Assembly: GCA_002269645.1 (NCBI GenBank)
Contig: NIVC01002078.1
Location: 1-64,000 of the forward strand
Direction: 5' to 3'
DNA from: Macrostomum lignano
Lineage: Eukaryota
Length of the DNA: 64,000 nucleotides
Under the pieces are notes generated by a model. It did no database searches, was not told the DNA's origin, and saw only the letters and a list, made by a program, of their open reading frames with translations. The position numbers were made by a program, and so were the translations under genes. Positions 1 to 48,279 of this stretch are shown here, piece after piece; the first letter of the stretch is position 1; each line of letters opens with the position of its first letter.

Positions 1-290
1 TAGCCTCTCTGGGTGAAAAAACACCCACCCAACTCCTAGCTTCGCTGTTCCTGCCCTAATATATACCGTATAGCCTCCTCTGGGTGAATAAAACACCCAC
101 CCCAACTCCTACCCTTAGTTTGCCTGCCCTAATGTACACTATAGCCTCCTCTGGGTGAATAAAACACCACCCCAACTCCTACCCTTAGTTTTCCTGCCCT
201 AATGTACACTATAGCCTCCTCTGGGTGTATAAAACACCCACCCCAACTCCTACCCATAGTTTCCCTGTCCTATATCCCTGCCCTATAAAC
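1..290. repeat. Degenerate tandem repeat, ~65-70 bp unit (TAGCCTCCTCTGGGTGAATAAAACACCACCCCAACTCCTACCC...CCTGCCCTAAT), about 4 copies, cut by the window edge
   Basis: Unit starts recur at ~1, ~71, ~141, ~211. Boundaries approximate. Confidence 0.85.
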
Positions 291-420
291 TTTTTATCCT
301 CCTTTGCACATAAAAATAGAAGCATCGTTATTCCGTGCCTGTCAATCAAAGCACAGCTTGCACTATTAAACCAGCACCCTTCCACCACCACCACTACCGC
401 ATGCGCGCCCCTTGTGTCAG

Positions 421-2603
421 GCCCAAACCAACGAATTCGGCATCCTGGTTGATCCCTCAACCGGTCAGCCGCTGCGAACTCGAGCGGCGAATTCCGATCT
501 CCGCCAGACGGCGCTCCATACTTTGTCGAATCGCGACTCGAACCCCGGACGGCCGTCTTGTACCGGAGTCTAACGGATTAATAATTCTACGACCTTCGGC
601 GACGCTACAAGCGTCAACGCTAACGGCGTGCTAATCGACGAAAACGGCGTCCCGATCCGAGGCCAGTCTGGCGAGTTTTTCTCCTCCAACGGCCAGCCGG
701 TCTACGGGCCGCGTGGCCCCGACGGCGAGCTGCTGGGCGACCCGCCGCCCGCCGTCAACTGGTTCGGCGTCCTGGCTAATCGGACACCGGCCTGGCTCTC
801 GCCCGACCGGACGGCACTCTAATCGACTCGGACGGTCGGCCGATCGCCTGCCGGCCAGTCCCGGACGGTGCTGCTCCGTTGGACGCGTTTCCCGAGGCCG
901 CGGCGAACTCACACGGCATCCTGACTTCGGCTCCGTGCCGCTGCGAGGCAGCCGCGGCGAGTTCTTTGTGCCGCGGCCGGCCCGCTCTCGGCGGCCTCCG
1001 ACATCCGACGATGGCCGTCTGCTGGCGTGCAAGCCAGACGACCCGCCTCCAAAGCTCAACTACTTCGGCGTGTTAGTGTCCGGGACAGACAACCGGCCAC
1101 TGTCCGGGCCGACCGGACGCGAACTATTGGACGCAACGGCAGCCGAAATCGCCTGTCGTCGTGTTGACTCGCCGGACGAAGTGGCCGACGCCGTGGCCAA
1201 CGAGTTCAACGTGCTGGCCGACTCGCGCGGGCTGCCGCTTCGCGGACTAAACGGAGAATTTTATGGCGCTCCCGACGGCGCCGTCGTTTACGGCCGGCGG
1301 CTGCCGAACGGCCAGCTGGTCGACGACGAGGCCCAGCAGCCAAACTACTACGCGTGCTGAGCGAGCCGGGGCCGGACGGCCAGCTGCTCGACCCGTCCGG
1401 CCGGCCAATCGATTGTCGCCGGGCCCGGCTTGATGCGTCCACTGGCCGACTGTTGAACGCGTCGACTGGCACGCCGCTGCCAACTGGCGGCGTCAACGAC
1501 AATGGCGTCCTGCTGGACGAGTCCGGCCGGCCAGTCCGAGGTCCGTCCGGCGAGTTTTTCGACTCCGATGTCGTCCGGTGCACGGAGTCCGCCGCCCGAC
1601 GGCAGTTTGGTGTCGCCGGCCGAGCCGAACGAGCTCGGGTGCTGACCAGCTCGGACACCGGGCAGCCCGTGCTTGGGCCAAACGGTGAGCTGCTCGACGC
1701 CGGAGGTCGGCCGCTGGCTTGCCGGAAAGTCTGTCTGGCCGACGAACAGCAGCTTGTTGACGCCGACAGTCAAGCCGTTATCGACTCGGCGAAAGACGCG
1801 AGAACGAATTCGGCCTGCTGGTCGACGCCTCAACCGGGGCGCCGTTGAGAGACGCCCAGGGTCACTACTTCGACGCTCGGTGTCGCCCAGTGTGCGGCGC
1901 GCCTCGCGACCCGGCGAACGGTCAGCTGCTGGCCTCCGAGTGCGGCTGGCGGGTCAACGAGTTCGGCGTGCTCGAAGACAAATCCACCGGACAGGTTGTC
2001 CGAGGACCCGGTGGGGAACTGTTGGACGAGTTTGGTCGGACAGTCGACGAAGCGGCCGAGGGTAGGCAGCGGGGCCCTAGGGGTGAACCCCTGCCAACGC
2101 CTGAAGAGGAGGCTGCCGTGGCTGCTGAAGCTGCGGCTGCTGAAGCTGCGGCCGCTGAAGCTGCGGCTGCTGAAGCTGCGGCTGCTGAAGCTGCGGCTGC
2201 TGAAGGCGCTGAAGGTGCCGAAGGTGCTGAAGGTGCCGAAGGTGCCGAAGGTGCCGAAGGTGTTGAAGGTGCCGAAGGCGATCCCAACGATCCCGAGGAC
2301 TCGAGCTTCTTAGGCCGGCTAAAGAAAGGCTTCCACGAATTCCAAGAAAAAGTGGAGGAAATCGCTGATGAGACGGGCGAAAAGATCCGCGAAGCGAACG
2401 AGGAGAATCGAAAAAAATTCGAAGCCTTCAACGAGGAAAATAAAAAGAAATTCGCAGCGTTCAACGAGGATACTAAGAAAAAGTTCGACGCCTTCGGTGG
2501 GGACACCAAGAAGAGATTTGAAGCGTTCGGCGAGGGCACGGCGAGCATGTTCAAGAAGCTGGACCCGAAGAACCTCGCCGGAGGAGGCGAAGGCTCCAGC
2601 TGA
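421..2603 (+). CDS. Large 3'-terminal coding exon of a repeat protein: ~12 Gly/Pro-rich modules (NxFGVLxDxxxGxPxRGPxGE[FL][FL]D), an Ala/Glu-rich linker and an 11-mer amphipathic tail. Several apparent frameshifts in the first 1.4 kb; true 5' boundary uncertain
   Basis: The same peptide module is readable in successive frames: NEFGILVDPSTGQPLR (~431), NANGVLIDENGVPIRGQSGEFF (~620), NYFGVLVSGTDNRPLSGPTG (~1057), NEFNVLADSRGLPLRGLNGEFY (~1200), NDNGVLLDESGRPVRGPSGEFF (~1497), NEFGLLVDASTGAPLR (~1805), NEFGVLEDKSTGQVVRGPGGELLD (~1955). Frame is open from 1845 to TGA at 2601-2603. AATAAA at ~2656, then AT-rich DNA. Confidence 0.7.
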
Positions 2604-2842
2604 GGTGGAGCTTTCGTGTTGAGGTGGCAAGGAACCTGTTTTATGGCACTTGATAAATAAATTTTCTATCATGGTGACGGCTTCAGTGTGGCGTTGGTTG
2701 GCTTGTAGTCATTTTTATTCTTATAATTCGTTTTTCTACTTGGTGTTGTTCAGTGATTTACTTTTCTTGTCCTGTTTAATTTAGTTATTTCATTTCATTT
2801 CATTTATTTGATATTATATGAAATTGTTTTTTTTTATTCCAG

Positions 2843-5525
2843 GTTGGCAAATCGCCTACAGAAGATTACAGAGCCTACAGACAAGGTCACAAACGGCTGT
2901 CAAAGAATGTTTCTGTACCTGAAATTCGTGAGTTCTTGCTTTCTTTCTCTTGTCTTTCGGGCGGGTACAGGGACAGAGTGACAGGGCGGGTACAGGGACA
3001 GAGGTACAGAGTGACAGGGATTAGGGAGTCAGACTGACAGGGATTAGGGAGTCAGAGTGACAGGGATTAGGGAGATCAGAGTGACAGGGATTAGTGAGAT
3101 CAGAGTGACAGGGATTAGTGAGATCAGAGTGACAGGGATTAGGGAGATCAGAGTGACAGGGATTAGGGAGATCAGAGTGACAGGGATTAGTGAGATCAGA
3201 GTGACAGGGATTAAGGAGATCAGAGTGACAGGGATTAGGGAGTCAGAGTGACAGGGATTAGGGAGTCAGAGTGACAGGGATTAGGGAGATCAGAGTGACA
3301 GGGATTAGGGAGTCAGAGTGACAGGGATTAGGGAGATCAGAGTGACAGGGATTAGGGAGATCAGAGTGACAGGGATTAGGGAGATCAGTGTGACAGGGAT
3401 TAGGGAGATCAGAGTGACAGGGATTAGTGAGATCAGAGTGGCAGGGATTAGGGAGATCAGAGTGATAGGGATTAGGGAGATCAGAGTGACAGGGATTAGG
3501 GAGTCAGAGTGACAGGGATTAGGGAGATCAGTGTGACAGGGATTAGTGAGATCAGAGTGACAGGGATTAGGGAGATCAGTGTGACAGGGATTAGGGAGAT
3601 CAGTGTGACAGCGATTAGTGAGATCAGAGTGACAGGGATTAGGGAGATCAGAGTGACAGGGATTAGTGAGATCAGAGTGACAGGGATTAGTGAGAACAGA
3701 GTGACAGGGATTAAGGAGATCAGAGTGACAGGAATTAGTGAGATCAGAGTGACAGGGATTAGTGAGATCAGTGTGACAGGGATTAGTGAGATCAGTGTGA
3801 CAGGGATTAGTGAGATGAGTGTGACAGGGATTAGTGAGATGAGAGTGACAGGGATTAGTGAGATGAAAGTGACAAGGATTAAGGAGATCAGAGTGTAAGG
3901 GATTAGTGAGATGAGAGTGACAGGGATTAAGGAGATCATATGAAGTCATATGACAGGGACATGGAGTCAAATGACAGGGACATGGAGTCAATGACAGGGA
4001 CATGGAGTCATATGACAGGGACATGGAGTCATATGACAGGGACATGGAGTCAAATGACAGGGACATGGAGTCAAATGACAGGGACATGGAGTCAAATGAC
4101 AGGGACATGGAGTCATATGACAGGGACATGGAGTCAAATGACAGGGACATGGAGTCAAATGACAGGGACATGGAGTCAAATGACAGGGACATGGAGTCAT
4201 ATGACAGGGACATGGAGTCATATGACAGGGACATGGAGTCATATGACAGGGACATGGAGTCATATGACAGAAGCCAGGATCAGAGTGCCAGTTGTCTTAT
4301 TTCACTAAGCTTATTGCAACGATATGCATCGGAAATCGCTCAAGCATAGAACTGACTGCCAACCCTCCAGACGTCACCAACGAGGACCTGCCCTATTCCG
4401 ACGCCGAAGAGGAGTACATGCCCGAGGAGGACGAGATCATCAGCGATGACGTCACGCATCCCTACGACAGCGGCAGACGCGGCGGTCGCGGCTCCGGCTG
4501 GGATCGGGATCGGGACCGGGATCGGGACCGGGATCGGGACCGGGATCGGGACCGGGATCGGGATCGGGACCGGGACCGCTACCAGCAGCAGCGGGACCGG
4601 CACTACGGTGGCAGGCGAGGCGAGCCGTACCATCACGGCCGGCATCAGGCCAGGCAGTCATCGGCGGCGGCAGGCGGCGGCGGCGGCGGTGGCGGCGGAG
4701 GCGGAGGATCGCGAAGTCGCCGACAAAGTGGCCACCGGTCTGACTCGCCGCCGCCTCCGCCTCCGCCGGCGCCGCCTCAGCAGCAGCAGCAGCAGCAGCA
4801 CCATCATCATCAAGCTGGGAGCAGGGATCGAGCAGGCCGGCAAAGGCGGCATCCCAGTCAGCAGCAGGAGTCGTCATTTGAAATGCCGGAGCCTGAGCAG
4901 CCGCAGCAGCAGCCGCATATGCAACAGCAGCAGCAACCGCAGCAGCAACAGCGAGCTGCTCCATCCGGGATATCCAGGATTTTTGTTGCCCTATTCGACT
5001 ATGATCCCGCCACAATGAGCCCGAACCCGGATGCCATTCAAGAGGAGTTGCCGTTTAAGGTTGGTTGAATTCGCTGTGCTGGGGTGTGCTCAAGGGCTGT
5101 GGGTGTCGGGATCAAGGAGGGAATGGCGGTGACTCAGCGGAGGATCAAGGAGGGAATGGCGGTGACTCAGTGGAGGATCAAGGAGGGAATGGCGGTGACT
5201 CAGTGGAGGATCAAGGAGGGAATGGCGGTGACTCAGTGGAGGATCAAGGAGGGAATGGCGGTGACTCAGTGGAGGATCAAGGAGGGAATGGCAGTGACTC
5301 AGGGGGGTGATCAATGTGAGATTTTCCTCAATTTTTTTCTTCCATTTCCTTTCCCCACCGCAGGAAGGTCAGCTGATGAAGGTGTGGGGCGACCGAGATG
5401 AAGACGGATTTTACCACGGCGAATGCAACGGTCGCACGGGTCTGATCCCCTATAATATGGTGAACGAAGTTCCTGTTGGACAAATTGACGATCCGAGCCA
5501 ACTGGATCTGCTTCTGTCGCAACAA

Positions 5526-9120: not shown

Positions 9121-9344
9121 GCCCTAAATATACAGCCAAAAATGGCCACCAATATCAGACTGGTTTCAGAATCACCCCGCCAGAAATGTAAATCTCAATG
9201 CCGCAATGCAGCAGACTGGGCCCAGCTGAAGGCTTCCATTTGCCAGCCAGCCAACCATGTTCGCACAATGCATATTCAAATAGTATAAAGCAAGTCCACA
9301 CGAGAACAGCGCTCTAACCAAAGATTCCCTTTAAGTGTTTCGTC

Positions 9345-10344
9345 ATGGCTTTACGCAGATGCCACAAACTTTGCAACGTCATCGGCTTGGCAAAGATTGT
9401 ATTCCTCACCTGCGTATCGTTGATCGCCTGCGGTTTAATAGTGTCCAGCATCCTTGCCTATCTCATCATATTGCCGTACTATCGCGAGTCGCAATTTCAA
9501 CCGACCAGCTGCGAATATCTTGGCGAAGATTTGCACTATTGCATGCGCAACCAACGGGAAAGCTATGGCTACTTGTGCAAGAAGGAGAAGTGCAGATTCC
9601 CATGCTACGTTGTTCGGGTCAACGTGTCTGGTCTGTCAACAGCTGGAACTCTGTTTGAGAACTACTTGACGTTTTCCGACGTGTACGAGGTGTGTGTACA
9701 AACGAATAATTTCAGCCAAACTGTTGTACATACTCAGGTCACTATCTTTCTAAAAACCTTCCTCCGAATGAACAGAAACACCCTCTTCAATGAGCACATT
9801 ACGGTGCGTCTCTCTGCCCTTTATCTATGTACATTCCCTTCTGCCCTTCACTGTACATCATCATTCTTTCCAAATGTACATACATTCCCTTTCCAAACTT
9901 CACTGCGCATCATCGGTCTCTCGATCTCTGCCTTTCGCTGTACATATGAGCTATTTCAAACCCTTACTGTACACTTCTGGCCTCCCTCTACCCCTAAATG
10001 TACATTCAGGTCGTTTGAATTTTCCTACCCCTCAACTCCGCCCCAATCAGGAGGGCTGCAGTTCCTCGCCCTGTCTGCCAGAGCCAACGGAGAACGTAGA
10101 GATGACCCAGCGCTACATTCGCACCCTGAGGCATAGAAGAAACTTCACCTGCTATTATCGAGGTGACGACAACACTGACCCCAAGAGATCGGTGCTGCTC
10201 ACTAAGATCTACACAAAAGAGCAGGCTAAGCACTGCGCCATCTGGCCAGCATTTGCTGTCTCAATTGGCGCCATCGTGCTCATCGGAACTCACTACTGCG
10301 CTGGGTGCACCGTTTGGACTAAGGATAAAACTGTTATTGCCTGA
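9345..10344 (+). CDS. BK channel beta-subunit (KCNMB/CaKB)-like / TipE-like two-TM protein, paralogue 1 (212 aa)
   Basis: Exons 9345-9689 (GAG/GTGTG) and 10051-10344 (AATCAG/GAG), phase 0. TM1 VFLTCVSLIACGLIVSSILAYLIILPY; Cys-rich loop with F.PTSC, FPCYVVRVNVS, LFENY, CSSSPC, NFTCYY; SVLLTKIYT then TM2 AIWPAFAVSIGAIVLIG. The motif order parallels KCNMB (PCL.VNV..LY..CS..P..F.C..V...Y....L.WP). Confidence 0.8.
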
Positions 10345-11404
10345 ATAGCCAGTAGAACTACGAGTTGAGTAGATTGCTCATTTATATTAGACCTTTGGAT
10401 TTGGTCATATAGAGATAATTCTGATCTTTGGTATTACGACAAAAGCTTAATTCCATACATGTTGCATGCATTCAATGCGTGTTAAGTTGCTATGCCTGAA
10501 TATGTCGAAGCTGGAACGCACAGCAGACAGACCGCCCGCTGAGAATGTCAATGGGCGAAACCGTGTATTGGGTAAGCATTCAATTTAAGACACGTGCATA
10601 TTCAACCCACGATTGTCTATGGCCAAAACCGTGTATGGAAAGAGTATTTAGGACATTAACCAGTTGAGTTCAGACCATAGATCATATGTATATAAGATGT
10701 ATGGTTCAGACATTAAAACTCGGAGCCTTTAGACAAAAATGCGTAATTTGTGACGCAGAAGTCGAACAAGTGATAAAGTAAATTGGCATTTTGTGATGCA
10801 CATATTTTATAGCGACTGTGACTAAACTGTCAGGCCACATGTGTGCTCAATCAGATATTTTCATGGGCCAAGCAGCTGGTCAGGAAGTGCAGTGCGTTAG
10901 CTAACCAGGGTGCACTCTTGACAACCGGGATGACATCCAAGCCTGACTCCGCGATTCTCTGCAGCACCAAGGGAACTCCAATTCTGTAGATGCTATCCGT
11001 CTGGAGGACTCTCCAGCTCCATTGGCGGCACTTGTCTGAATTTGACTGCTCTGTGTCTTAAATTCAATGCTGTGTCGTGCCTGTGCCAGAGACTGTTTTG
11101 ACCATAGACAAGAGTAGAAATATTGTTGAACATTATTGTCATTGTCTTGAAATGAATGCTCGGATTCTTAAATAAAGTTAAAAAGTGGTAATTTATATTA
11201 ATTGGCTGCTCAGGCAGCTACGCGTCTCAACATTTTCAGATCATTTTCAGCCCTTTGCACTCTATTCATATTGGTTTATTATGGAATTTAATGCTGTCAA
11301 GACACTTCTTAAATATATTTTTGTGTGAAATACACTCTCAGTTATTTGCCTACATGTTTCTCTCGTTTTGTTATAAAAAGGTTGATTATTGCAATAAATG
11401 CTCA

Positions 11405-13894
11405 AAAACAACAACAACAAAATACGCAACCCCGCATGCAAAGTCATAGTTAGGGCAGGGCGCGTCAGATGGCGCGCCGCAGAGCCTGGGAGCGAACGAA
11501 GTCCGCTCCGTTGGCAGTGTCGGGGCGCCCCAGCGTCGCACAGCAGGCAGTCCACGTATCGACGGGTTCGGGCCAGACCCCGCCTGAACGGACCCTGCAA
11601 GGTGAGCAGCAGGACGTCCTGAACAGGTTGGGGGCAGTAGCCCTCGGCCCGGATCACGTGGCCCGCCAGTTGAAGTCGCCACCGGCGCAGGATGGTGGAC
11701 GGGCGCTGCAGCTTGGCCCGATCGTACAGGGCCTCGGTCCCGACGCTCTCGTCAGCTCGAAAGGCCGCACGGAGCAGCCCTGAGTGCGCCGAGTCCAGCT
11801 GCCGCTCTAGCGTAACGTCTAGCGTCTAGCGCTCTAGCGTAGCCGTCAGCGTCCACGTCTCGGCGTTGTAGAGCAGGACGGTTTCGACCACCGCCTGCCA
11901 CAGCCGAGCCCTCTGGCGGTCGGGCAGCGCTTCAGACTGGAGGACGGCTCGGATCGAACGAAAGGCCGCCCAGGCGAATCCCCTGCGCCGCCGGAGGTCT
12001 TCCTCCACGTGGGGCACCAGACCGCCGAGGTAGGTGAACCGCTGGCAGCGTGCGAGCTTGGTCGTCTGCCAGTCTGCGCCGCGGCACGTCAGGTCCGCTG
12101 GGATGTCGGCCGGCACAGTCAGCACCTGTGCATGTTGCGCTGGAGGACACCAATACCGATGCGCTGGAGGACCTGCTTGACCGGCTGGATCTGGTGTCCG
12201 CGAACACCCAGTTCCGCAAGCCCCCTGCCCGCCTGGTCACCTTTGCGGGCTGCAAGAGAAGGCGGCGGAACGCACGCGGACGGAATGCCACGAGGAGACT
12301 GGCGCAACTCGATCATGCGCTGGTTCGCACTCGCGAGCGCCGCCGCGTCACCAACTGCGACACCATGGCTCCGCTGGCTCTCCGGTCAGACCACCAACTC
12401 CTGATCTGCGACTTGCGGCTCCGCGACCAGCTCTACCGACCGCCAAAGCAGCGGCCACGGCGCTACTATCGCGCACTGTTGGACACCCGCGTGAAGCGTC
12501 AATTCGCGGGTGCCTTCGTCGGCGCGCTTGGATACCAGCGCGAGGTGGAGTATTCCGACATCAGCACCGCCGTTAGAGCCGCTGCAGAGCAGACGGTCCC
12601 GCTGATGCGGCCAGCGCAGAAATCGCTGCCTGTCTGGCAGAGCGACCCCATCATCAGGCAGAGCGACCCCATCATCAGGCAGGCGCGGCTCAACATCGAG
12701 CGACTCCGCAGAAACCGGAGGCCCACAGGCGACGCTGAAGACGCATTTGAGCGCCTTCTTGACGAGCGGCAGCAGGCCGCTGTCGACGACGCCATTAGGT
12801 CCATCACTGCAGCCGGCCCCGACGTGAAGAGCCGCGCAGTATGGACGGCCGTCCGGACTCTGACGGGGCGCAACAAGCGCGTGGCGCTGAACCTGGCCGG
12901 CGACACCCCGGAGGAGCGCAGGAATGAATTGCGCGACTTCTTCGCCGGCATCGTGAACGCGCCCGCGTCGCCGCTGCCCGCCAGCTTTGCGCTCCCACTG
13001 GACACGCCGCTCCCAGCTGAGGAGGACTTCTGCACCAGACCAGTCACCAAGGAGAACGTTGTGCTGTTCGCTCGGAAAACATCAGGCGGCAAGGCGCTCG
13101 GCCCCGACGAAGTCCCGGTCGAAGCGCTGCGGCTCCGCTGTGTGCCCTCCCAGGTCACAGGCGTCATGAACCACGTGCTCGCTGGCGCTCCTGCGCCTAA
13201 CCGAGTGGACCGTCGCGCACATCGTGCCGATCCCGAAGAAGGCAGGGACAACGCGGAAAGAAGACCACCGCGGGATCTCGCTGATGTCCTGCACCGCGAA
13301 GCTCTTCAACCGGCTGCTGCTCGATCGTCTGCAGTCGGTGCTGGACCCGTACCTGCGGTACGAGCAGAACGGATTCCGGCCGCAACACGCGGTACAGTGA
13401 CACAGATCCTCGCACTCTGCCGGGTCATCGAGGAGGCGCGCATCCGCCAGTCTACGCTGATCATTGTCTTCGTTGACTTTCGAAAGGCGTTTGACTCGGT
13501 GTTGAGAGCCGCACTTCCCTTTGTCCTTCGAGCCTACCGGGTACCCCAGCAGCTAATCGACGCAGTCATGGCGCTGTATTGCAATACTCGAGCTGCTGTG
13601 GTGACGGCGGACGGCCTGTCTGACCTGTTCGATACTTCATCAGGAGTTCTGCAGGGCGACACGCTAGCGCCGTTCCTCTTCGTGCTGCTGCTGGACTGGG
13701 TGCTTCGGACCGCACTCCCCTCGGCTGTCGACTGCTTCCTACTGCGCAGACGCATCGGTCGCCGACACGGCGAAAAGCGCCTGAGCGTGCTTGGCTACGC
13801 CGACGACCTCGCCCTCCTGTCCTCGTCCGTTGAAGGCGCCCAGCGCCAGATCGACAGGCTGGTCGAGGTGGCATCGAGCGTCGGTCTGATCGTC
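11405..13894 (-). mobile_element. 5'-truncated, 5'-inverted non-LTR retrotransposon (APE endonuclease remnant plus reverse transcriptase; RTE-like) with a 9-bp target-site duplication
   Basis: TSD AAATGCTCA at 11396-11404 and 13895-13903. The minus-strand segment ~12128 to 11405 encodes the RT C-terminus (FTYLGG, LYNAETWTLT, RLQLAGHVIR), a stop at 11465-11467 and a short (TTG)n tail. The plus-strand segment ~12126-13894 encodes QLDHAL..SDH (APE end) and RT motifs FVDFRKAFDS, GVLQGDTLAPFLF and LGYADD, with a frameshift pair near 13200 and 13385. Confidence 0.92.
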
Positions 13895-14196
13895 AAATGC
13901 TCATAATACTACTGTCAGGAACAGAGATCATGTTTTAGCTATTCTATCAGAATTTAAGCAAATTGGTTTAATATCTTAGAAGAAGTCTTTAAATCAATGT
14001 TTCGTTATTGAAAACCAAATTTTTGTGCGCTTTTAAGCCGATAATTTTCTTGCTGTAAAATGTAAAATGTATGAAATAATTTTTCGAGAAAATAGAGAAA
14101 ATGACAACAGCATCATGCATAGCTAGTGCTTCTGTTTTTTCTGTTCTTGTTCATTGATTGAGTGTCGATCAGTCTGATCAAGATGCTATGCATCGA

Positions 14197-15570
14197 TCAG
14201 GCAATAACAGTTTTATCTTGAGTCCACACGGTGCACCCAGCGCAGTAGTGAGTTCCGATGAGCACAATGGCGCCAATTGAGACAGCAAATGCTGGCCAGA
14301 TGGCGCAGTGCTTAGCCTGCTCTTTTGTGTAGATCTTAGTGAGCAGCACCGAGTTCTTCTGGCGAGAGTCTGGGCCGCGAAAGTAGCAGGTGAAATTGCG
14401 GCGACGTCGCAGGGTTTTAATGTAGCGCCGGGTCATTTCCACGTTTTCTACCGCCTCGGGTAGGCAGGGCGCCGAGCTGCAGTTTGTCTGGAAGGGCGGT
14501 GGAGGCGCAGCCGGGGGTTATAATTGTTTTAGACTAGAACGAGTGTACGTAGGGGGTTAGAGTTTGCTGGGGTAATTGGTTTGGTTTCGCCTTTGCCCCT
14601 TTTCAAATGTACATTCGTTAGTGTACACATACCGTCAGAGAGTTGGGATCTCTCCGCCTTTAAATAAATTTAAATGTACATTAAACATTTGTTCAATTGG
14701 AGGGCGGGGCGCAGCAGGGGGTAAGAATTGTTTTCAGGCCTGGCCCAGATTGGAGCGCCAGTGACTTCTATGGCGTTGACTAGATGTACATTCGTGAGTG
14801 TACACATGCGGTCCGAGAGTTAGTGGGTTTCTCTCCACCTATATTTAGATGTACATTAAACATTTCTTCAATTGAGGGGGGCGGAGGCGCAGCAGGGGGT
14901 AAGAATTGTTTTCAGGTCTGGCCCAGAATGGAGCGTCACTGCGTCAGTGATTTCCGGAAGGGGGGGGGGGTAAATGGGCTTTGCTTTGGCGTTAAATAGA
15001 TGTACATTCGTGAGTGTACGCACTACACAGGGGGTCAGAGATTTTCAGGTTTTTCTCTGACCTAGCCTGTATTTTATTTTTCGTCGGAGACTTGTTTAAT
15101 TTTAAATAAGGTTCATACACAAACAAAAGAGGATCCTACACGTTAGGCAACTCTGATGAATATATCATTTTTTCAAAGATTAGATGTTTCACAATTTCAG
15201 GAACAGAAACAGAACAGTGCAGTTTCTTCAACAAAGTTACCTTATCTTGCTCCAGATAAGTGAGAAAATTTTCAAACAGTACACCTTGCTCAGGCACGCC
15301 CGAGATGTTGACCCTGACCATGTAGCAGGGATAGCTGCTTCTATCCTTGGCGCACTTGCTTTCGCAGTCAATAATACGCTTCATCTCTTCGCCAAGGTAC
15401 ACGCAGCTGGTCTGCTCGAATCGCGCCTCTCGGTAGTACGGCAGAATGATTAAATAAGCTAGGATACCGCCAACTATGACTCCGCAGGTGATTAGTGATA
15501 CACAGGTAAGAAAAACGTATTTGGCTATGCCGATCACATTGCAGAGGCGGTGACAGCGGCGAAGAGCCAT
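14197..15570 (-). CDS. BK channel beta-subunit (KCNMB/CaKB)-like / TipE-like two-TM protein, paralogue 2 (206 aa)
   Basis: Exons 15570-15241 (AAG/GTAAC) and 14487-14197 (TTCCAG/ACA), phase 0. MALRRCHRLCNVIGIAKYVFLTCVSL... and SVLLTKIYTKEQAKHCAIWPAFAVSIGAIVLIGTHYCAGCTVWTQDKTVIA are nearly identical to paralogue 1. Confidence 0.82.
14590..15025. repeat. Degenerate ~185-200 bp tandem duplication (about 2.3 copies) in the intron of paralogue 2, rich in ATGTACAT
   Basis: ATGTACATTCGT(T/G)AGTGTACAC starts at ~14606, ~14784 and ~14999; GGCGCAGCAGGGGGTAAGAATTGTTTTCAGG occurs twice. Confidence 0.8.
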
Positions 15571-15914
15571 GTCCGTTAGCGCTGTTTTAGTCAATGGGGT
15601 GCAGAGCAAAACCTGAAATGGTTACAGGGTAGCTTTTCAATGATATTTGCATGTCATCGTCATAATACATTTCAACAGGTGGCAGCTTTAATCCAACCCT
15701 ACTCATAACTTTCAGCTGCTCTCTCCTCACCAGACTAAACTAGGACTTTGTGACGCGAATTGTCCCCACCCACAGTTAAGATGAGCAACGCGGGCGTGGC
15801 GTAGATTGCGTCGTCTGTTTTTTTCCTGTCAAGTAGCACAATATCCAACTCAACAGTTCAACATAGTACCGTAGCCAACTCAAAAGTGCATAAAATTCAG
15901 TTGATCTGCAGATT

Positions 15915-15924: not shown

Positions 15925-16047
15925 AGCGCTTCTGTTGCGCAACTGTTGCGCAATAGCGACCATGGATACAAAAGGCCGAACCAACTTGCACTTGGCGGAG
16001 CAGCTGGGCACAAGAGAAACTGCACAGAAAAGAGTGAGTCTTCTATA

Positions 16048-17142
16048 CGAGGGGTGTCGGGGAAATTCGGACACTTTTAATCCCAGAGCAAAGCGGCACA
16101 TATTTTCCCCATGAATTCAGTCGCGTGTATTTTGGTCATTTCTTTCAAAAGTTAAGTGAAAAAACCATCGCAATGTATGTCTGTAAATGTTTGTAAAAGT
16201 TTAAAATATATAAAAAGCGATGTCCTCAAAAATGAATTTTAGTCGTTCATCACGCTCACGATGGTGTCAATAATCAGAGATAGTCGGTGATCAATAATCG
16301 ATCGATAATCCATAATCGGTGATCAATAATCGATCGATAATCCATAATCGGTGATCAATAATCGATCGATAATCCATAATCGGTGATCAATAATCGATCG
16401 ATAATCCATAATCGGTGATCAATAATCGATCGATAATCCATAATCGGTGATCAATAATCGATCAATAATCCATAATCGGTGATCAATAATCGATCGATAA
16501 TCCATAATCGGTGATCAATAATCGATCGATAATCCATAATCGGTGATCAATAATCGATCGATAATCCATAATCGGTGATCAATAATCGATCGATAATCCA
16601 TAATCGGTGATCAATAATCGATCGATAATCCATAATCGGTGATCAATAATCGATCGATAATACATAATCGGTGATCAATAATCGATCGATAATCCATAAT
16701 CGGTGATAAATAATCGATCGATAATCCATAATCGGTGATCAATAATCGATCGATAATCCATAATCGGTGATCAATAATCGATCGATAATCCATAATCGGT
16801 GATCAATAATCGATCGATACTCCATAATCGGTGATCAATAATCGATCGATACTCCATAATCGGTGATCAATAATCGATCGATACTCCATAATCGGTGATC
16901 AATAATCGATCGATAATCCATACTCGATCATATGGATTAGTGGATTAGTGGCAGTGATATAATCGATTAATGGCACTGCTATGGTTTTTCTCACGTAACT
17001 TTTGACAGAAATGACCAAACTACACGCGACTGAATTCATTGGAAAGTATGTGCCGCTTTTAAATGACACCAAAGTTGTGCTTGCAGCTGCTACTGTTTTT
17101 GGTCTGGGATTAAAAGTGTCCGAATTTCCCGGACACCCCTCG
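16048..17142. mobile_element. Non-autonomous Tc1/mariner-type element (MITE-like) with long terminal inverted repeats, TA target duplication and an internal satellite
   Basis: Left end TA|CGAGGGGTGTCGGGGAAATTCGGACACTTTTAATCCCAGA; right end TCTGGGATTAAAAGTGTCCGAATTTCCCGGACACCCCTCG|TA (1 mismatch in 40). Inverted similarity continues to ~16172 and ~16977, with a ~40-bp gap in the left arm. No transposase ORF. Confidence 0.88.
16285..16922. repeat. Satellite, 32 bp unit (ATAATCGGTGATCAATAATCGATCGATAATCC), ~20 copies, inside the MITE
   Basis: Near-perfect tandem copies; each contains the palindromes TGATCA and ATCGATCGAT. Confidence 0.97.
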
Positions 17143-17461
17143 TACTTGAAATGACTATGAATGATGCACACGACTTGGCCTTTTGGTAGCTCTGAATTAA
17201 CAATTTACAACTTGATTTGGCATTTTGCCACTTGAGTTGAAAATGACTTGCAATAGCTGCTTTAACTGTGCCAATTTGATAGTAAAAAAATGTCCAAGTT
17301 CCAACACTTGGCTCAGGGCATGCAGCTCTGCATGGACAAAGCTGAGTTACATGTAGAGAACTACGCATTTTCAACTCGTATTATGGTGTCAGGTTTCTGA
17401 CCGGCCATTGCATGCCGCTGATTCCAGCTCTATTACAGCTCTCGAACAAACCGCACTCACG

Positions 17462-23280: not shown

Positions 23281-23844
23281 AAGAGAAAACTAAGTGAAAA
23301 TTGAGAGGCAAGAATGTCACTTTCCTGACGAGAAGGAATATGAGCAGGGCTAGGGACGGCAAGGAGCCCATCTGAAAAGGCGTCTGAAAACTAGAAAAAA
23401 GTTGCATCAGGTCGAGATGCAGTTAACTAGGAAAGCCATTAATTCAGAGTCGCTAGTCGTAAGGCAGAGCATTTTCACGCTTCAAGAAAAACATGTAAAC
23501 ACTCGGGTTTAAAGACAACTGCACTGTGCTTTCCTGGCCTTATAATTGTCTAGAAGCATTGCTAATCTCATGCGGGCTGGAAGGGGGGAGGATAAATACG
23601 GGAGCGGAGAAGGAAATTTCACGGGACATTAATCCATACGGGGGAAGTGAGGGTTTGTAAGTAATCGCTATATGACTAACATTAATAATTTATGCGGGCA
23701 CACACGGGGGATAGGAGGCTGAGTTTAGGCACCCTTAACTCATTCCCATCACCCACTCTGTGCGCGCTTTCGGTTTTCTTTTGGAGTGTGAGCAAACTTG
23801 TAGTGGGGCCCCGTCAGGCCTGGCAGGGTGTGACTCTCCTTCTC

Positions 23845-25390
23845 TCACAGTCTGACTCTCTTTATTTCACAATCTGACTCTCTTTCTCTCACAGTCTGAC
23901 TCTCTTTATTTCACAATCTGACTCTTCTTCTCTCACAGTCTGACTCTCTTTATTTCACAATCTGACTCTCTTTCTCTCACAGTCTGACTCTCTTTATTTC
24001 ACAATCTGACTCTTCTTCTCTCACAGTCTGACTCTCTTTATTTCACAATCTGACTCTCTTTCTCTCACAGTCTGACTCTCTTTATTTCACAATCTGACTC
24101 TCTTTCTCTCACAGTCTGACTCTCTTTATTTCACAATCTGACTCTCCTTCTCTCACAGTCTGACTCTCTTTCTCTCACAGTCTGACTCTCTTTATTTCAC
24201 AATCTGACTCTCTTTCTCTCACAGTCTGACTCTCTTTATTTCACAATCTGACTCTTCTTCTCTCACAGTCTGACTCTCTTTATTTCACAATCTGACTCTC
24301 TTTCTCTCACAGTCTGACTCTCTTTATTTCACAATCTGACTTTTCTTCTCTCACAGTCTGACTCTCTTTATTTCACAATCTGACTCTCCTTCTCTCACAG
24401 TCTGACTCTCTTTCTCTCACAATCTGACTCTTCTTCTCTCACAGTCTGACTCTCTTTATTTCACAATCTGACTCTCTTTCTCTCACAGTCTCTCCTTCTC
24501 TCACAGTCTGACTCTCCTTCTCTCACAGTCTGACTCTCCTTCTCTCACAGTCTGACTCTCCTTCTCTCACAGTCTGACTCTCCTTCTCTGTCCGATTCTC
24601 CTTCTTTCCCAGTCTGACTCTCCTTATCTCACAGTGTAACTCTCCTTATCTCACAGTGTAACTCTCCTTATCTCACAGTGTAACTCTCCTATCTCACAGT
24701 GTAACTCTCCTATCTCACAGTGTAACTATCCTTATCTCACAGTGTAACTATCCTTATCTCACAGTGTAACTCTCCTTATCTCACAGTGTAACTATCCTTA
24801 TCTCACAGTGTAACTATTCTTATCTCACAGTGTAACTCTCCTATCTCACAGTGTAACTCTCCTATCTCACAGTGTAACTCTCCTATCTCACAGTGTAACT
24901 ATCCTTATCTCACAGTGTAACTATTCTTATCTCACAGTGTAACTCTCCTATCTCACAGTGTAACTCTCCTATCTCACAGTGTAACTCTCCTATCTCACAG
25001 TGTAACTCTCCTTATCTCACAGTGTAACTATCCTTATCTCACAGTGTAACTATCCTTATCTCACAGTGTAACTATTCTTATCTCACAGTGTAACTCTCCT
25101 ATCTCACAGTGTAACTCTCCTATCTCACAGTGTAACTCTCCTTATCTCACAGTGTAACTCTCCTTATCTCACAGTGTAACTCTCCTTATCTCACAGTGTA
25201 ACTCTCCTTATCTCACAGTGTAACTATCCTTATCTCACAGTGTAACTCTCCTATCTCACAGTGTAACTCTCCTATCTCACAGTGTAACTCTCCTATCTCA
25301 CAGTGTAACTCTCCTATCTCACAGTGTAACTCTCCTATCTCACAGTGTAACTCTCCTTATCTCACAGTCCCTCCTTCTCTCACAGTGGGA
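23845..25390. repeat. Compound minisatellite, 22-23 bp units (TCTCTCACAGTCTGACTCTCTT grading into TATCTCACAGTGTAACTCTCCT)
   Basis: Two related unit types in succession, switching near 24620. Confidence 0.95.
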
Positions 25391-26274
25391 CTCTCCTTAT
25401 CACACCCTGACCTACTCCGCGTCTGTCAGTCTAACCCAGATCATTTAATTTTATCTGAAATAGTAATTCATATCAGCAGTATCAATATTGTCGAAAAAAC
25501 GACACTACTTACCCCTGGCTTGAAATATCTCAAATTCACTTCAGAAGCCGAATGGTTGAAAATTAAACGTTGGTTTATTTCTGCAATACGCCTATAGAAG
25601 CCTCAGTAAATTGCAGGTAAAAATCCCAAGTTATATAGCTATAGAATTCATCCAATCGCAGCGCATGGAGCAGATCCCATCACCCATAACCCTTGTGCAT
25701 TCGTCGGCATCTACGGTATACAGTACTCTCTTCATTCTGCTCAGGGCTCAACTGATCTGCCTTGCTCCCTGCCTATCTCTCTCATTCAATCTCGAATTGC
25801 CAGCCAACCTTTGTTGCTGATCAGGCCTTCAGAGGAGGAAACGTTTTTGACAGTCGAAAAAAATGCAGTCAAAAAATTGCTTTTTTATCCTTGGCTGCGG
25901 GTCTACCAGCAAGGCACTGTGATTTCATGCATGTAACAGTCGCTGCGCTAAATAATTACCTGAATCCATATTCCATCTATATCTAGACTTAATCTATTTT
26001 TAAGCTGCAATCAATTTACCCGTGCGGACTCAAAAGCATCCCCTTTTGATGTAAGAAACAATGGAAGGTTCGCTATTGCTGTGATTTACCTGTTCCGTAT
26101 TGTAATTTTTCTCTTTCCTGAGCTGCTTTTAGTGACTTGTAGCGCGAATCAAGCTAGACAACTGAGATATAGAAAAATATGTAGTGCCAAATTCTGTGTC
26201 CTTTGATTCTGTATATTCTGCCTCCATTCATTTCAGGACACCCACCTCACATCCAGCTTGTCCATTCTATAAAT

Positions 26275-30953: not shown

Positions 30954-31004
30954 AAGCGCACGAAGAATTTGGCGGCGATACCACTGTGTAGAAGATTCTG
31001 TTCA

Positions 31005-32560
31005 GGGTGTAGATTAATGATTGTAATAAACTATTCAGGGTGTAGATTAATGATTGTAATAAACTATTCAGGGTGTAGATTAATGATTGTAATAAACTAT
31101 TCAGGGTGTAGATTAATGATTTTAATAAACTATTCAGGGTGTAGATTAATGATTGTAATAAACTATTCAGGGTGTAGATTAATGATTTTAATAAACTATT
31201 CAGGGTGTAGATTGATGGTTGTAATAAACAATTCAGGGTGTAGCTTTATGATTGTAATAAACTATTCAGGGTGTAGATTAATGATTGTAATAAACTATTC
31301 AGGGTGTAGATTAATGATTGTAATAAACTATTCAGGGTGTAGATTAATGATTGTAATAAACTATTCAGGGTGTAGATTAATGATTGTAATAAACTATTCA
31401 GGGTGTAGATTAATGATTGTAATAAACTATTCAGGGTGTAGATTAATGATTTTAATAAACTATTCAGGGTGTAGATTGATGGTTGTAATAAACAATTCAG
31501 GTGTAGCTTTATGATTGTAATAAACTATTCAGGGTGTAGATTTATGATTGTAATAAACTATTCAGGTTGTAGATTTATGAGTGTAATAAACTATTCAGGG
31601 TGTAGATTGATGGTTGTAATAAACTATTCAGTGTGTAGCTTTATGAGTGTAATAAACTATTCAGGGTGTAGATTTATGAGTGTAATAAACTATTCAGGGT
31701 GTAGATGTATGAGTGTAATAAACTATTAAGGTTGTAGATTTATGAGTGTAATAAACTATTCAGGGTGTAGATTGATGGTTGTAATAAACTATTCAGTGTG
31801 TAGCTTTATGAGTGTAATAAACTATTCAGGGTGTAGATTGATGGTTGTAATAAACTATTCAGTGTGTAGCTTTATGAGTGTAATAAACTATTAAGGGTGT
31901 AGATTGATGATTGTAATAAACTATTCAGGGTGTAGATTAATGATTGTAATAAACTATTCAGGGTGTAGATTAATGATTGTAATAAACTATTCAGGGTGTA
32001 GATTAATGATTGTAATAAACTATTCAGGGTGTAGATTAATGATTGTAATAAACTATTCAGGGTGTAGATTAATGATTGTAATAAACTATTCAGGGTGTAG
32101 ATTAATGATTGTAATAAACTATTCAGGGTGTAGATTAATGATTGTAATAAACTATTCAGGGTGTAGATTTATGAGTGTAATAAACTATTCAGGTTGTAGA
32201 TTTATGAGTGTAATAAACTATTCAGGGTGTAGATTGATGGTTGTAATAAACTATTCAGTGTGTAGCTTTATGAGTGTAATAAACTATTCAGGGTGTAGAT
32301 TTATGAGTGTAATAAACTATTCAGGGTGTAGATTTATGAGTGTAATAAACTATTCAGGTTGTAGATTTATGAGTGTAATAAACTATTCAGGGTGTAGATT
32401 GATGGTTGTAATAAACTATTCAGTGTGTAGCTTTATGAGTGTAATAAACTATTCAGGGTGTAGATTTATGAGTGTAATAAACTATTCAGGGTGTAGATTT
32501 ATGAGTGTAATAAACTATTAAGGGTGTAGATTGATGGTTGTAATAAACTATTGAGGGTGT
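31005..32560. repeat. Minisatellite, 33 bp unit (TATTCAGGGTGTAGATTAATGATTGTAATAAAC), ~46 copies
   Basis: Starts ~50 bp after the claudin stop; 11-aa periodic ORFs. Confidence 0.97.
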
Positions 32561-33571
32561 AGATCGATGGTTGTAATTAGCTATTCAGTTTGTAACAACT
32601 ATTCAGCAGTTAGATTAGTTTATTACAATTCAGGGTTCAGGGGTGATACACAAGCCGTCACGTTGTGCTGTCATTACAATGAATTTCAAGTGCTACAAAA
32701 GCTGTATCAGTTTTGCTAAAATTTTAGCAACAAAACTTTTTAACTGTGCAATAATCTGTGTAGAAGTTTGTATTGATTCCATTTTTTGCATGGATTATAG
32801 TACATTTAAGTGTATTGTGCAATATTTTTATGCCTATGAATAATTCATATTTATAACTTTTTTTATATTCTGTTGTTGTATTTAAGTTATTTATAACATT
32901 TCATAGAACCTAAAACCTGTTTATTACAACACAATTTTGAATGTGCAAAATGCTTTTTGTTAATCTTTCTGCAAGCTAAACTGATTTTTAAAATCAAGTC
33001 AATTTTCTAATTTTCCATCCGAAGTCAGCTTTGTTTTTTGTTCTTTTTTCATTTTTTGTCAGCTTGATAATTTTAACCGAATTTCATTCGCTCATTATTT
33101 TTCCTGCGAGTGCAATTTGTTTTACTTTTTACTAACAATAGTAGTATGCTGCGCACATTCCTGGCCTAGAATTTCTAAGCGACCCCAACAAATCGAACAC
33201 ATTCCAGTCGTTTTATTGCACTTATTTATACCCTCTTTGTAGGAACTTTTATTCCTGATCAAACTGATTATCGCTTCAGCTGCTTACTCAAATGCACTTT
33301 TGTGGGTGCAATCTCGCCTAGCGCTAGCTTATTTATTGAATATGTTTACCGCAAACTCAATGAACTCAATGAACATTTTTAATGCCTCCATTTGTTTAAA
33401 CCCGTGTTGTTGAGCAATAAGTAAAACTCTGTGCAGCAGGTATTTTGGCGTCATTTTCATGTACAACAAAACTCACCTGTAACAGATATCGCTGACTTGA
33501 TTTCATTGCTTTCTGCACTGAAACTATTAGCGATAAATGGCATACATTGTTATTCCAGGTTACTAACTATC

Positions 33572-36600: not shown

Positions 36601-38012
36601 CCATAGATCCTGACCCCAAGCCCATAGATCCTGACCCCAAGCCCATAGATCCTGACCCCAAGCCCATAGATCCTGACCCCAATCCCATATAGATCCTGAC
36701 CCCAAGCCCATATAGATCCTGACCCCAAGCCCATAGATCCTGACCCCAATCCCATATAGATCCTGACCCCAAGCCCATATAGATCCTGACCCCAAGCCCA
36801 TAGATCCTGACCCCAATCCCATATAGATCCTGACCCCAAGCCCATATAGATCCTGACCCCAAGCCCATAGATCCTGACCCCAAGCCCATAGATCCTGACC
36901 CCAAGCCCATAGATCCTGACCCCAATCCCATATAGATCCTGACCCCAAGCCCATATAGATCCTGACCCCAAGCCCATAGATCCTGACCCCAATCCCATAT
37001 AGATCCTGACCCCAAGCCCATATAGATCCTGACCCCAAGCCCATAGATCCTGACCCCAAGCCCATAGATCCTGACCCCAAGCCCATAGATCCTGACCCCA
37101 ATCCCATATAGATCCTGACCCCAAGCCCATATAGATCCTGACCCCAAGCCCATAGATCCTGACCCCAATCCCATATAGATCCTGACCCCAAGCCCATATA
37201 GATCCTGACCCCAAGCCCATAGATCCTGACCCCAATCCCATATAGATCCTGACCCCAAGCCCATATAGATCCTGACCCAAGCCCATAGATCCTGACCCCA
37301 AGCCCATAGATCCTGACCCCAAGCCCATAGATCCTGACCCCAATCCCATATAGATCCTGACCCAAGCCCATATAGATCCTGACCCCAAGCCCATAGATCC
37401 TGACCCCAATCCCATATAGATCCTGACCCCAAGCCCATATAGATCCTGACCCCAAGCCCATAGATCCTGACCCCAATCCCATATAGATCCTGACCCCAAG
37501 CCCATATAGATCCTGACCCCAAGCCCATATAGATCCTGACCCCAAGCCCATAGATCCTGACCCCAAGCCCATAGATCCTGACCCCAAGCCCATAGATCCT
37601 GACCCCAATCCCATATAGATCCTGACCCCAAGCCCATATAGATCCTGACCCCAAGCCCATAGATCCTGACCCCAATCCCATATAGATCCTGACCCCAAGC
37701 CCATATAGATCCTGACCCCAAGCCCATAGATCCTGACCCCAAGCCCATAGATCCTGACCCCAAGCCCATAGATCCTGACCCCAAGCCCATAGATCCTGAC
37801 CCCAATCCCATATAGATCCTGACCCCAAGCCCATATAGATCCTGACCCCAAGCCCATAGATCCTGACCCCAATCCCATATAGATCCTGACCCCAAGCCCA
37901 TATAGATCCTGACCCCAAGCCCATAGATCCTGACCCCAAGCCCATAGATCCTGACCCCAAGCCCATAGATCCTGACCCCAAGCCCATAGATCCTGACCCC
38001 AATCTCATAGAT
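33652..38012. repeat. Large satellite of 21/23 bp units (GATCCTGACCCCAA[G/T]CCCATA[TA]), ~200 copies, with higher-order structure
   Basis: Direct inspection. All three minus-strand frames lack stops, producing the three ~1450-aa ORFs. Confidence 0.98.
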
Positions 38013-43313: not shown

Positions 43314-47923
<4,610 letters not shown>

Positions 47924-47934
47924 CTGATGGAGCA

Positions 47935-47997
47935 GACAGACAGACAGGTGGACAGACACAGACAGACACACCACACAGGCTGACAGACAGACAGACA

Positions 47998-48041
<44 letters not shown>

Positions 48042-48240: not shown

Positions 48241-48279
<39 letters not shown>

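What the first reader, a model, noticed from the sequence alone, without database searches (positions are those of the whole stretch)
11396..13903. Twin-priming-type 5' inversion in a non-L1-looking (RTE-like) retrotransposon, with an intact 9-bp TSD
Seen: read on the minus strand the insertion is TSD, then an inverted segment (13894 to ~12126), then the sense 3' segment (~12128 to 11405), a (TTG)n tail and the TSD AAATGCTCA. The inverted segment's outer end stops at G-L-I-V-(AA), whose AA overlaps the TSD. The sense segment resumes only a few codons later (VLTVPADIP...FTYLGG), so just the N-x-x-K-T part of the RT G-L-x-V-N-x-x-K-T motif is missing. The inner junction joins the 5'-truncation point (endonuclease remnant) to the 3' segment. 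Established: this is the geometry predicted by twin priming, characterised mainly for mammalian L1. Inference: twin priming also operates for this RTE-like element with a trinucleotide tail, which I believe is rarely documented.
Basis: partly seen in the sequence, partly recalled or inferred. Interest (0 to 1): 0.75.

Follow-up and report, generated by a model that had tools for sequence, protein, structure and literature searches.

The report
Half-flipped jumping-gene copy in a flatworm
A dead 2.5-kb copy of an RTE-like retrotransposon in the flatworm Macrostomum lignano has its front part flipped in the way the "twin priming" model predicts, which is a modest extension of a mechanism so far documented almost only for mammalian L1.

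Summary
A GC-rich insert at 11405-13894 sits in AT-rich DNA between two exact copies of AAATGCTCA (11396-11404 and 13895-13903).

- **Layout on the minus strand:** TSD, an inverted block (endonuclease tail plus reverse transcriptase up to ...SVGLIV), a 15-21 nt junction filler, the sense 3' block (VLTVPADIP... to the stop codon and a 42-nt UTR), a T4(GTT)4T2 tail, then the TSD.
- **Breakpoints:** Nine relatives compared directly each show exactly six residues missing between the blocks, and all 14 aligned relatives carry N-x-x-K-T at that spot. At DNA level 14-18 nt are missing.
- **Outer junction:** The inverted block meets the TSD with a 2-nt AA overlap.
- **Same source:** Both blocks rank relatives in the same order.
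- **Element type:** Relatives are about 3.3 kb with one ORF (APE endonuclease plus RT) and a microsatellite tail, so RTE-like in build. Clade phylogeny could not be run.
- **Host and independent support:** One M. lignano UniRef gene model matches the window almost exactly, and three such models read across the same inner junction.

Twin priming at insertion is the best explanation (about 0.8). It is one old event, with no empty site and no genome-wide count. Verdict: new member of a known kind, moderate interest.

The parts
11396..11404 (+). Target-site duplication, copy next to the element's 3' tail (AAATGCTCA; TGAGCATTT in element orientation)
   Evidence: Exact 9-mer, identical to 13895-13903. 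The chance estimate is about 3e-4.
11405..11422 (-). 3' tail TTTTGTTGTTGTTGTTTT, a (GTT/TTG)n microsatellite tail
   Evidence: Relatives L001 and L002 end in the same (TTG)n tail directly before unrelated flank. (GTT)n tails with a TSD starting in T are described for RTE-clade LINEs (PMC6007223).
11423..12127 (-). Sense 3' block: RT C-terminal part from (E)VLTVPADIP through FTYLGG to ...ALRRAI*, with the stop codon at 11467-11465 and a 42-nt 3' UTR. Defects are an in-frame stop with a roughly 24-nt partial duplication near 11805-11830, and a frameshift in the C-terminal coding part, placed by eye near 11528.
   Evidence: It aligns to L001 2537-3224 (83%) and L002 1706-2402 (84%). It matches HMM positions 722-923 on the - strand. 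Antisense reads of intact copies (P0078, P0079) fix the breakpoint at ...CAGCACCT|.
12128..12148 (.). Inversion-junction filler: GTGCATGT, with no template found, plus TGCGCTGGAGGAC, an exact copy of 12160-12172. If GAGGAC (12143-12148) is native element sequence, the filler is 15 nt rather than 21.
   Evidence: There is no convincing homology to L001 left of about 12143. The exact 13-nt direct repeat has 24-nt spacing. A relative of apparently the same subfamily, P0053, reads FVAGRENANTDA where the window reads VHVALEDTNTDA.
12149..13894 (+). Inverted 5' block, which reads as sense on the + strand: the last ~80 residues of the APE endonuclease, the linker, and RT motifs up to ...SSVGLIV. Defects are frameshifts near 13200 and 13391, and a 21-nt tandem duplication at 12638-12658 / 12659-12679.
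   Evidence: Pfam RVT_1 hit at E 2e-24. It aligns to L001 794-2513 and L002 11-1691. It matches HMM positions 132-720 on the + strand.
13895..13903 (+). Target-site duplication, upstream copy in element orientation. Its first two bases AA (13895-13896) also match the element's next codon AAC, giving a 2-nt overlap at the internal priming site.
   Evidence: Window: GGTCTGATCGTC|AAATGCTCA. L002: GGCCTAGTCGTC|AACACGCTG. BLAST extends the match to 13896.

Best explanation
This is one retrotransposition event of an RTE-like LINE of Macrostomum lignano that was resolved by twin priming.

1. The element's endonuclease nicked the window's + strand after ...AAATGCTCA. That 3' end primed cDNA 1 on the (GUU)n/U-rich end of the RNA. 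The one-base T/A overlap is shown; the priming itself is inferred.
2. The other strand was cut 9 nt away. Its 3' overhang ...GAGCATTT-3' paired through its last TT with the AA of codon AAC (...GLIV-N...) inside the same RNA.
3. From there it primed cDNA 2, which ran upstream to the endonuclease-coding region.
4. cDNA 1 stopped 14-18 nt short of that internal priming site.
5. The two cDNA ends were then joined, with 15-21 nt of filler. Thirteen of these bases copy a sequence 24 nt away, which points to a slip or template switch.

The result is TSD, inverted upstream block, sense 3' block, tail, TSD. The copy was non-functional from the start and has since picked up frameshifts, a stop codon and small duplications. 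The whole locus was later duplicated, or exists as diverged alleles.
For: - **TSD:** Exact 9-bp copies bound the composite.
- **Adjacent breakpoints:** In each of the nine relatives compared directly, the inverted block ends exactly 6 residues before the sense block begins (the motif is present in all 14 aligned relatives). At DNA level, L002 positions 1692-1705 are the only bases missing.
- **Outer junction:** The outer end of the inverted block is the element-3'-most position, and it shares AA with the TSD. About 70% of human 5'-inverted L1 copies show 2-5 bp of microhomology there (PMC2912911).
- **Normal tail:** The sense block ends in the family's usual (TTG)n tail.
- **Same source:** The two blocks give matching identity rankings: P0002 89/90%, P0001 83/88%, P0004 69/71%.
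- **Not a snap-back copy:** There is no inverted repeat between the blocks.
- **Independent support for the inner junction:** Three M. lignano UniRef gene models (P0050, P0076, P0077) read across it. P0050's first exon also maps 1.3 kb upstream in the window.
- **TSD length:** Nine bp lies inside the 7-15 bp range reported for RTE-clade LINEs (PMC6007223).
Against: - This is a single locus. No empty site and no un-inverted allele could be retrieved.
- A 2-nt overlap arises by chance about once in 16.
- The inversion junction carries 15-21 nt of filler rather than clean microhomology.
- The 9-bp TSD is shorter than the 10-20 bp typical of L1 inversions. Yamaguchi et al. argued that short overhangs disfavour second priming (PMC4245944).
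- The copy is old and mutated and contains two small tandem duplications. Later rearrangement at this locus is therefore not excluded.
- No same-genome full-length consensus was available. The 5' truncation point is known only to within about 6 nt.
Confidence: 0.8

Rival explanations
1. Post-insertion inversion. An ordinary 5'-truncated copy inserted with a 9-bp TSD. Two later DNA breaks then flipped its 5' 1.75 kb, losing 14-18 nt at one join and gaining filler at the other.
For: It yields the same final order. The filler with a templated 13-nt copy and the small deletion are typical of end-joining repair. The copy is old, with frameshifts, a stop codon and two tandem duplications.
Against: One break would have to fall exactly, within 0-2 nt, at the TSD/element boundary of a 2.5-kb insert. 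That is roughly a 1-in-1000 coincidence. All three independent gene models already carry the inversion, and no un-inverted form was seen.
Confidence: 0.08
2. A copy of an already rearranged source. The inversion arose elsewhere, and this locus received the composite by retrotransposition of its transcript or by DNA-level duplication.
For: At least two sequence variants of the same junction exist in M. lignano: EDT in the window and P0077, EDA in P0050 and P0076. The DV1 assemblies hold 180-312 Mb of blocks that are at least 95% duplicated (PMC5730564).
Against: P0050's copy shares upstream flank with the window: exon MTQRYIRTLRRRRNFT at 10102-10149. The copies are therefore locus duplicates or alleles, not separate insertions. 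A retrotransposed composite RNA would need its 5' end to fall exactly at the base adjacent to the sense block's start. Even if this locus is a DNA duplicate, the original event is still explained by twin priming.
Confidence: 0.05
3. Two independent insertions lying head to head, or an assembly chimera.
For: The region is highly repetitive, and M. lignano assemblies are known to be difficult.
Against: The inverted block lacks any 3' UTR or tail, so it is not an insertion in its own right. The chance that two independent breakpoints lie within 20 nt of each other in a 3.3-kb element is about 1%. One TSD brackets the whole composite. The inner junction recurs in three UniRef gene models that differ from one another by substitutions.
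Confidence: 0.04

Closest known systems
5'-inverted (twin-primed) mammalian L1 insertions (Ostertag & Kazazian 2001 model, as described in PMC2912911 and PMC4245944)
   Same: One TSD brackets the composite. The sense 3' block carries the tail. The inverted block comes from the adjacent upstream sequence with a small gap. There is microhomology between the target overhang and the internal priming site.
   Different: - The element is not L1. It has one ORF, is about 3.3 kb, and has a (GTT)n tail instead of poly(A).
- It presumably recognises its 3' end stringently.
- The TSD is 9 bp rather than about 15 bp.
- The inversion junction has 15-21 nt of filler.
- The host is a flatworm.
The single 5'-inverted Nimb-2_DR (I-clade, zebrafish) insert recovered in chicken DT40 cells (Yamaguchi et al. 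2014, PMC4245944)
   Same: It is a non-L1, APE-type LINE giving a 5' inversion, and it is a rare single case.
   Different: That case was a de novo event in a cell-culture assay, in another clade. This one is an old genomic copy of an RTE-like element.
RTE-clade LINEs with (GTT)n tails (e.g. plant RTE-1 families; Nishiyama & Ohshima 2018, PMC6007223)
   Same: A (GTT)n tail, a TSD that starts with T in element orientation, and a TSD length within 7-15 bp. Relatives show one ORF with APE plus RT at about 3.3 kb.
   Different: No T-stretch lies about 10 nt upstream of the TSD here. Clade membership by RT phylogeny was not tested.

Membership tests
Twin-priming 5'-inverted LINE insertion | A single intact TSD flanks the whole inverted-plus-sense composite | tested here: met
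   AAATGCTCA at 11396-11404 and 13895-13903; chance about 3e-4.
Twin-priming 5'-inverted LINE insertion | The 3' block is in sense orientation and ends in the element's normal tail next to the TSD | tested here: met
   The tail TTTTGTTGTTGTTGTTTT abuts the TSD. L001 and L002 end in the same tail.
Twin-priming 5'-inverted LINE insertion | The inverted block is the sequence immediately upstream of the sense block in the element (small deletion or duplication only), with its element-3' end facing the upstream TSD | tested here: met
   Exactly 6 residues (14-18 nt) are missing against each of nine relatives compared directly, and all 14 aligned relatives carry the motif there. HMM positions are 132-720 (+) and 722-923 (-).
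Twin-priming 5'-inverted LINE insertion | Microhomology between the target overhang and the RNA at the internal priming site | tested here: met
   A 2-nt AA overlap. This is weak on its own, since it arises by chance about 1 time in 16.
Twin-priming 5'-inverted LINE insertion | Both blocks derive from one RNA or subfamily | tested here: met
   Identity rankings match for both blocks. Whether they came from a single RNA molecule cannot be proven.
Twin-priming 5'-inverted LINE insertion | Microhomology at the inversion junction between the two cDNA ends | tested here: inconclusive
   A 2-nt CT overlap is possible, but 15-21 nt of filler is present, including a 13-nt templated copy.
Twin-priming 5'-inverted LINE insertion | An empty site with a single copy of the TSD sequence | not testable with these tools
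   No M. lignano genomic DNA is in the searchable collections. There is no paralogous empty site in the window. Window ORFs are not on record.
RTE clade of non-LTR retrotransposons | A single ORF with an N-terminal APE endonuclease plus RT, no gag-like ORF1, and an element of about 3.2-3.5 kb (my knowledge of Malik & Eickbush 1998) | tested here: met
   Full-length relatives are about 930-1090 aa, and the three scanned here (1042-1087 aa) have only PF03372 and PF00078. They sit on 3.3-3.7 kb contigs. L001 is 3266 nt and holds one frameshifted ORF.
RTE clade of non-LTR retrotransposons | A short 3' UTR ending in a microsatellite-like tail rather than poly(A) | tested here: met
   A 42-nt UTR plus (GTT)4 here, and (TTG)7 in L001. 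A di- to tetranucleotide repeat starts within about 155 nt of the matched end of the ORF in 26 of 47 distant relatives, and none of those repeats is poly(A). (GTT)n is listed for RTE families in PMC6007223.
RTE clade of non-LTR retrotransposons | The RT groups with RTE references in a phylogeny | not testable with these tools
   No labelled reference sequences were available, and database hits carry no clade names. The PDB shows only that R2 and L1 RTs are equally distant, at E about 1e-24.
L1 clade | ORF1 plus ORF2, about 6 kb, poly(A) tail | tested here: not met
   One ORF, about 3.3 kb, (GTT)n tail.

The most novel reading that the evidence does not exclude
5' inversion by twin priming is a regular outcome for this flatworm RTE-like family, not a one-off. 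That would contradict the view from cell-culture assays that 5' inversion depends on L1-specific and human-host-specific features. It would also show that a 9-nt overhang with 2 nt of pairing is enough for internal priming by a LINE that recognises its 3' end stringently. The 14-nt gap would then mark the footprint of the second priming complex.
Probability: 0.15. Interest if true: 0.55.

Novelty: new member of a known kind. Interest (0 to 1): 0.35.

Why it matters
Twin priming is the accepted origin of about 10-30% of human L1 copies and of most small human inversions. In assays with other LINEs it was almost never seen, which led to the proposal that it needs L1- and host-specific features (PMC4245944). 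A clean natural example in an RTE-like element of a flatworm suggests that the second-strand overhang can prime internally in a very different LINE and host. It also gives a concrete pattern to search for across M. lignano and other RTE-rich genomes.

There is a practical point for annotation too. Copies like this are split by repeat annotators into two opposite-strand fragments. Here they have also seeded spurious gene models in the M. lignano proteome.

Tried and rejected
- **Other copies or an empty site in the window:** none found.
- **Exact look-up of the window ORFs that span the outer junction:** not on record.
- **Metagenome scan for family DNA:** it returned only distant relatives at about 30% identity, with one at 64%. 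The 5' truncation point therefore could not be fixed against a same-subfamily endonuclease sequence. P0053 gave only protein-level help.
- **Viral-contig scan:** nothing.
- **Screen of 82 fetched loci for further head-to-head, contiguous arrangements:** only L035 came up, and its contig ends at the decisive position. The minus-strand piece is only 26% identical to P0004, so this is inconclusive.
- **Clade naming from database hit names:** no informative names.
- **Snap-back synthesis:** rejected, because the two blocks share no inverted repeat.
- **A template for GTGCATGT within 11001-14400:** none found.
- **Primary papers:** Ostertag & Kazazian 2001 and Ichiyanagi & Okada 2008 are not held. 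Their content is cited only through papers that describe them, or from my own knowledge.
Full report
**What is in the sequence**

The + strand carries AAATGCTCA at 11396-11404 and again at 13895-13903. Only two unrelated minus-strand copies of this 9-mer occur elsewhere in the 64 kb. Between the two copies lies a block in a stretch of about 63% GC, set in flanks of roughly 35-46% GC. The block has no second copy in the window. With the flank composition, and allowing +/-3 nt at each boundary, a 9-nt match is expected about 3e-4 of the time.

On the + strand, about 12149-13894 translates, with two frameshifts near 13200 and 13391, into the C-terminal part of an APE-type endonuclease, a linker and a reverse transcriptase. 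The RT matches Pfam RVT_1 positions 1-184 of 205 at E 2e-24 and ends ...SSVGLIV.

On the - strand, 12127-11465 translates into VLTVPADIP...FTYLGG... down to ...ALRRAI*. A 42-nt UTR follows, then TTTTGTTGTTGTTGTTTT at 11422-11405 directly against the TSD.

**Host and family**

The closest proteins are Macrostomum lignano gene models and metagenome-derived ORFs at 83-89% identity. One M. lignano model, P0077, matches window 11469-12320 with a single mismatch, so the window is M. lignano.

Full-length relatives are about 930-1090 aa. The three scanned with Pfam contain only PF03372 (residues about 100-340) and PF00078 (about 610-870). They sit on 3.3-3.7 kb contigs. L001 is a 3266-nt contig holding one frameshifted ORF. 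L001 and L002 end in (TTG)n exactly as the window copy does.

Among 47 distant relatives whose 3' ends are present, 26 carry a di-, tri- or tetranucleotide repeat starting within about 155 nt of the matched end of the ORF. None of those repeats is poly(A). Human L1 ORF2p and R2 RTs are equally distant, at E about 1e-24.

This build is that of the RTE clade as I know it from Malik & Eickbush 1998: one ORF with APE plus RT, about 3.3 kb, a short UTR and a microsatellite tail. (GTT)n tails, a TSD starting with T and TSDs of 7-15 bp are reported for RTE-clade LINEs (PMC6007223). A labelled RT phylogeny could not be run, so I call the element RTE-like.

**Breakpoints**

In nine relatives compared directly, the inverted block's alignment ends exactly six residues before the sense block's alignment begins. 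Examples are P0001 502/509, P0002 405/412, P0003 414/421 and P0004 718/725. All 14 aligned relatives carry N-x-x-K-T at that spot, followed by one more residue, usually E. The closest M. lignano copy reads ...SSVGLIV-NTLKTE-VLTVPADIP....

At DNA level the three sequences line up as follows:

| Sequence | Reading |
|---|---|
| L002 (intact relative) | GTCGTC\|AACACGCTGAAGACCGAG\|GTGCTC |
| Window, inverted block | ...ATCGTC, then AAATGCTCA |
| Window, sense block | (AG)GTGCTGAC |

Fourteen bases are certainly missing. The count is 16-18 if the AA and AG overlaps are assigned to the other partner.

Antisense reads of intact copies (P0078, P0079) fix the sense block's upstream end at ...CAGCACCT|, position 12127. 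An HMM built from the 14 relatives maps the + strand to positions 132-720 and the - strand to 722-923. Both blocks rank relatives in the same order with similar identities, so they come from one subfamily.

**Inner junction**

Homology to the endonuclease region of L001 is clear from GAGGAC (12143-12148) rightwards and absent to the left. TGCGCTGGAGGAC occurs exactly twice, at 12136-12148 and 12160-12172. A relative of apparently the same subfamily, P0053, reads ...FVAGRENANTDA... where the window reads ...VHVALEDTNTDA....

I therefore read 12128-12148 as filler. It consists of eight bases with no template found, plus a 13-nt copy of the sequence 24 nt further in. This fits a slip or template switch when the two cDNA ends were joined. 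That reading is inference. If GAGGAC is native, the filler is 15 nt.

**Mechanism**

In element orientation the order is as follows:

1. TSD
2. the reverse complement of the upstream block
3. filler
4. the downstream block
5. tail
6. TSD

The element-3'-most base of the inverted block lies against the upstream TSD. This is the twin-priming product described for L1 (PMC2912911). One target end primes at the RNA's 3' end. The other target end anneals internally and primes a second cDNA. The two cDNAs are then joined.

Here the second-strand overhang ...GAGCATTT-3' can pair its final TT with the AA of the AAC codon. cDNA 1 stops 14-18 nt before that site. Snap-back synthesis is excluded because the two blocks share no inverted repeat.

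**Rivals**

- **Later inversion.** It gives the same order but needs a break exactly at the TSD boundary.
- **Two independent insertions.** This is contradicted by the missing tail on the inverted block, the adjacent breakpoints and the single TSD.
- **Assembly chimera.** This is unlikely, because three UniRef gene models (P0050, P0076, P0077) read across the same inner junction, in two sequence variants.
- **Copy of an already rearranged source.** P0050's first exon maps to 10102-10149, 1.3 kb upstream of the insert. The copies are therefore duplicates or alleles of the locus, as expected for the DV1 genome with its 180-312 Mb of blocks at least 95% duplicated (PMC5730564). They are not separate retrotranspositions of a rearranged source.

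**Literature**

In the held library, 106 papers contain "twin priming" and 22 contain "twin-priming". All those listed concern mammalian L1 and its passengers. The only paper mentioning both BovB and the term merely cites the 2001 paper.

Yamaguchi et al. found 5' inversions only for human L1 in human cells, apart from one Nimb-2_DR insert in DT40 cells. They found none for ZfL2-1, and they argued that short overhangs disfavour second priming (PMC4245944). I could not read Ichiyanagi & Okada 2008, which analysed RTE 5' junctions. An earlier mention of RTE inversions there cannot be excluded.

**Verdict**

It is a new instance of a known mechanism in an unusual LINE type and host. It rests on one old, mutated locus, without an empty site or a genome-wide count. 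Interest is moderate.

Noticed in passing
window 10056-10344 vs 14197-14482; 9344-9529 vs 15386-15571: The insertion sits in the roughly 1.35-kb spacer (once the insert is removed) between inverted-repeat arms that are 84-94% and 73% complementary. Each inner arm encodes MTQRYIRTLR(R/H)RRNFT, at 10102-10149 on + and 14436-14380 on -. The host sequence may itself be a palindromic repeat or a transposon with long terminal inverted repeats.
   Followed up: partly
window-wide, e.g. 33654-38009, 61088-64000, 23831-25405, 31001-32588, 47933-49908, 43546-44537: More than 30 separate tandem-repeat arrays fill much of the 64 kb. Most are minisatellites with 10-70 nt units, the largest being 23 nt x 198 copies. 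There are also long (CAGA)n and (CTAT)n tracts. This fits the reported 15% simple and tandem repeats in M. lignano.
   Followed up: partly
window 11469-13141 (UniRef models P0050 A0A1I8FPK8, P0076 A0A1I8HLU8, P0077 A0A1I8HKC7): Public M. lignano gene models, two of them named 'DUF4806/DUF4780 domain-containing protein' and one uncharacterised, are translations through the antisense of the sense block and into the inverted block. They are annotation artefacts derived from the transposon.
   Followed up: yes
window 12638-12679 and about 11805-11830: There are two small tandem duplications inside the element. One is 21 nt and gives SDPIIRQ twice. The other is about 24 nt and introduces an in-frame stop (TLER*TLDVTLER). 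Relatives lack both.
   Followed up: partly
window 55262-55972 and 57936-58625 (-); 47171-47923 (+): Host gene exons are present. Two match HID1/dymeclin-family proteins (Pfam Hid1, E 2e-75 and 2e-15) and are separated by minisatellite-filled introns. A third is a potassium-channel exon (Ion_trans_2, E 9e-24).
   Followed up: partly
window 16046-17144: This is a foldback-like unit. Inverted repeats at 16046-16164 and 16986-17144 (90-96% complementary) enclose a 32-nt x 20 tandem array at 16280-16926.
   Followed up: no
L035 (MDSQ01029320.1) 480-788 (-) and 1718-3873 (+): A distant RTE-like element in a metagenome contig shows a head-to-head arrangement whose profile coordinates (46-769 on one strand, 802-907 on the other) could fit a second twin-primed copy. 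The contig ends at the decisive position, and the minus-strand piece is only 26% identical to P0004.
   Followed up: partly
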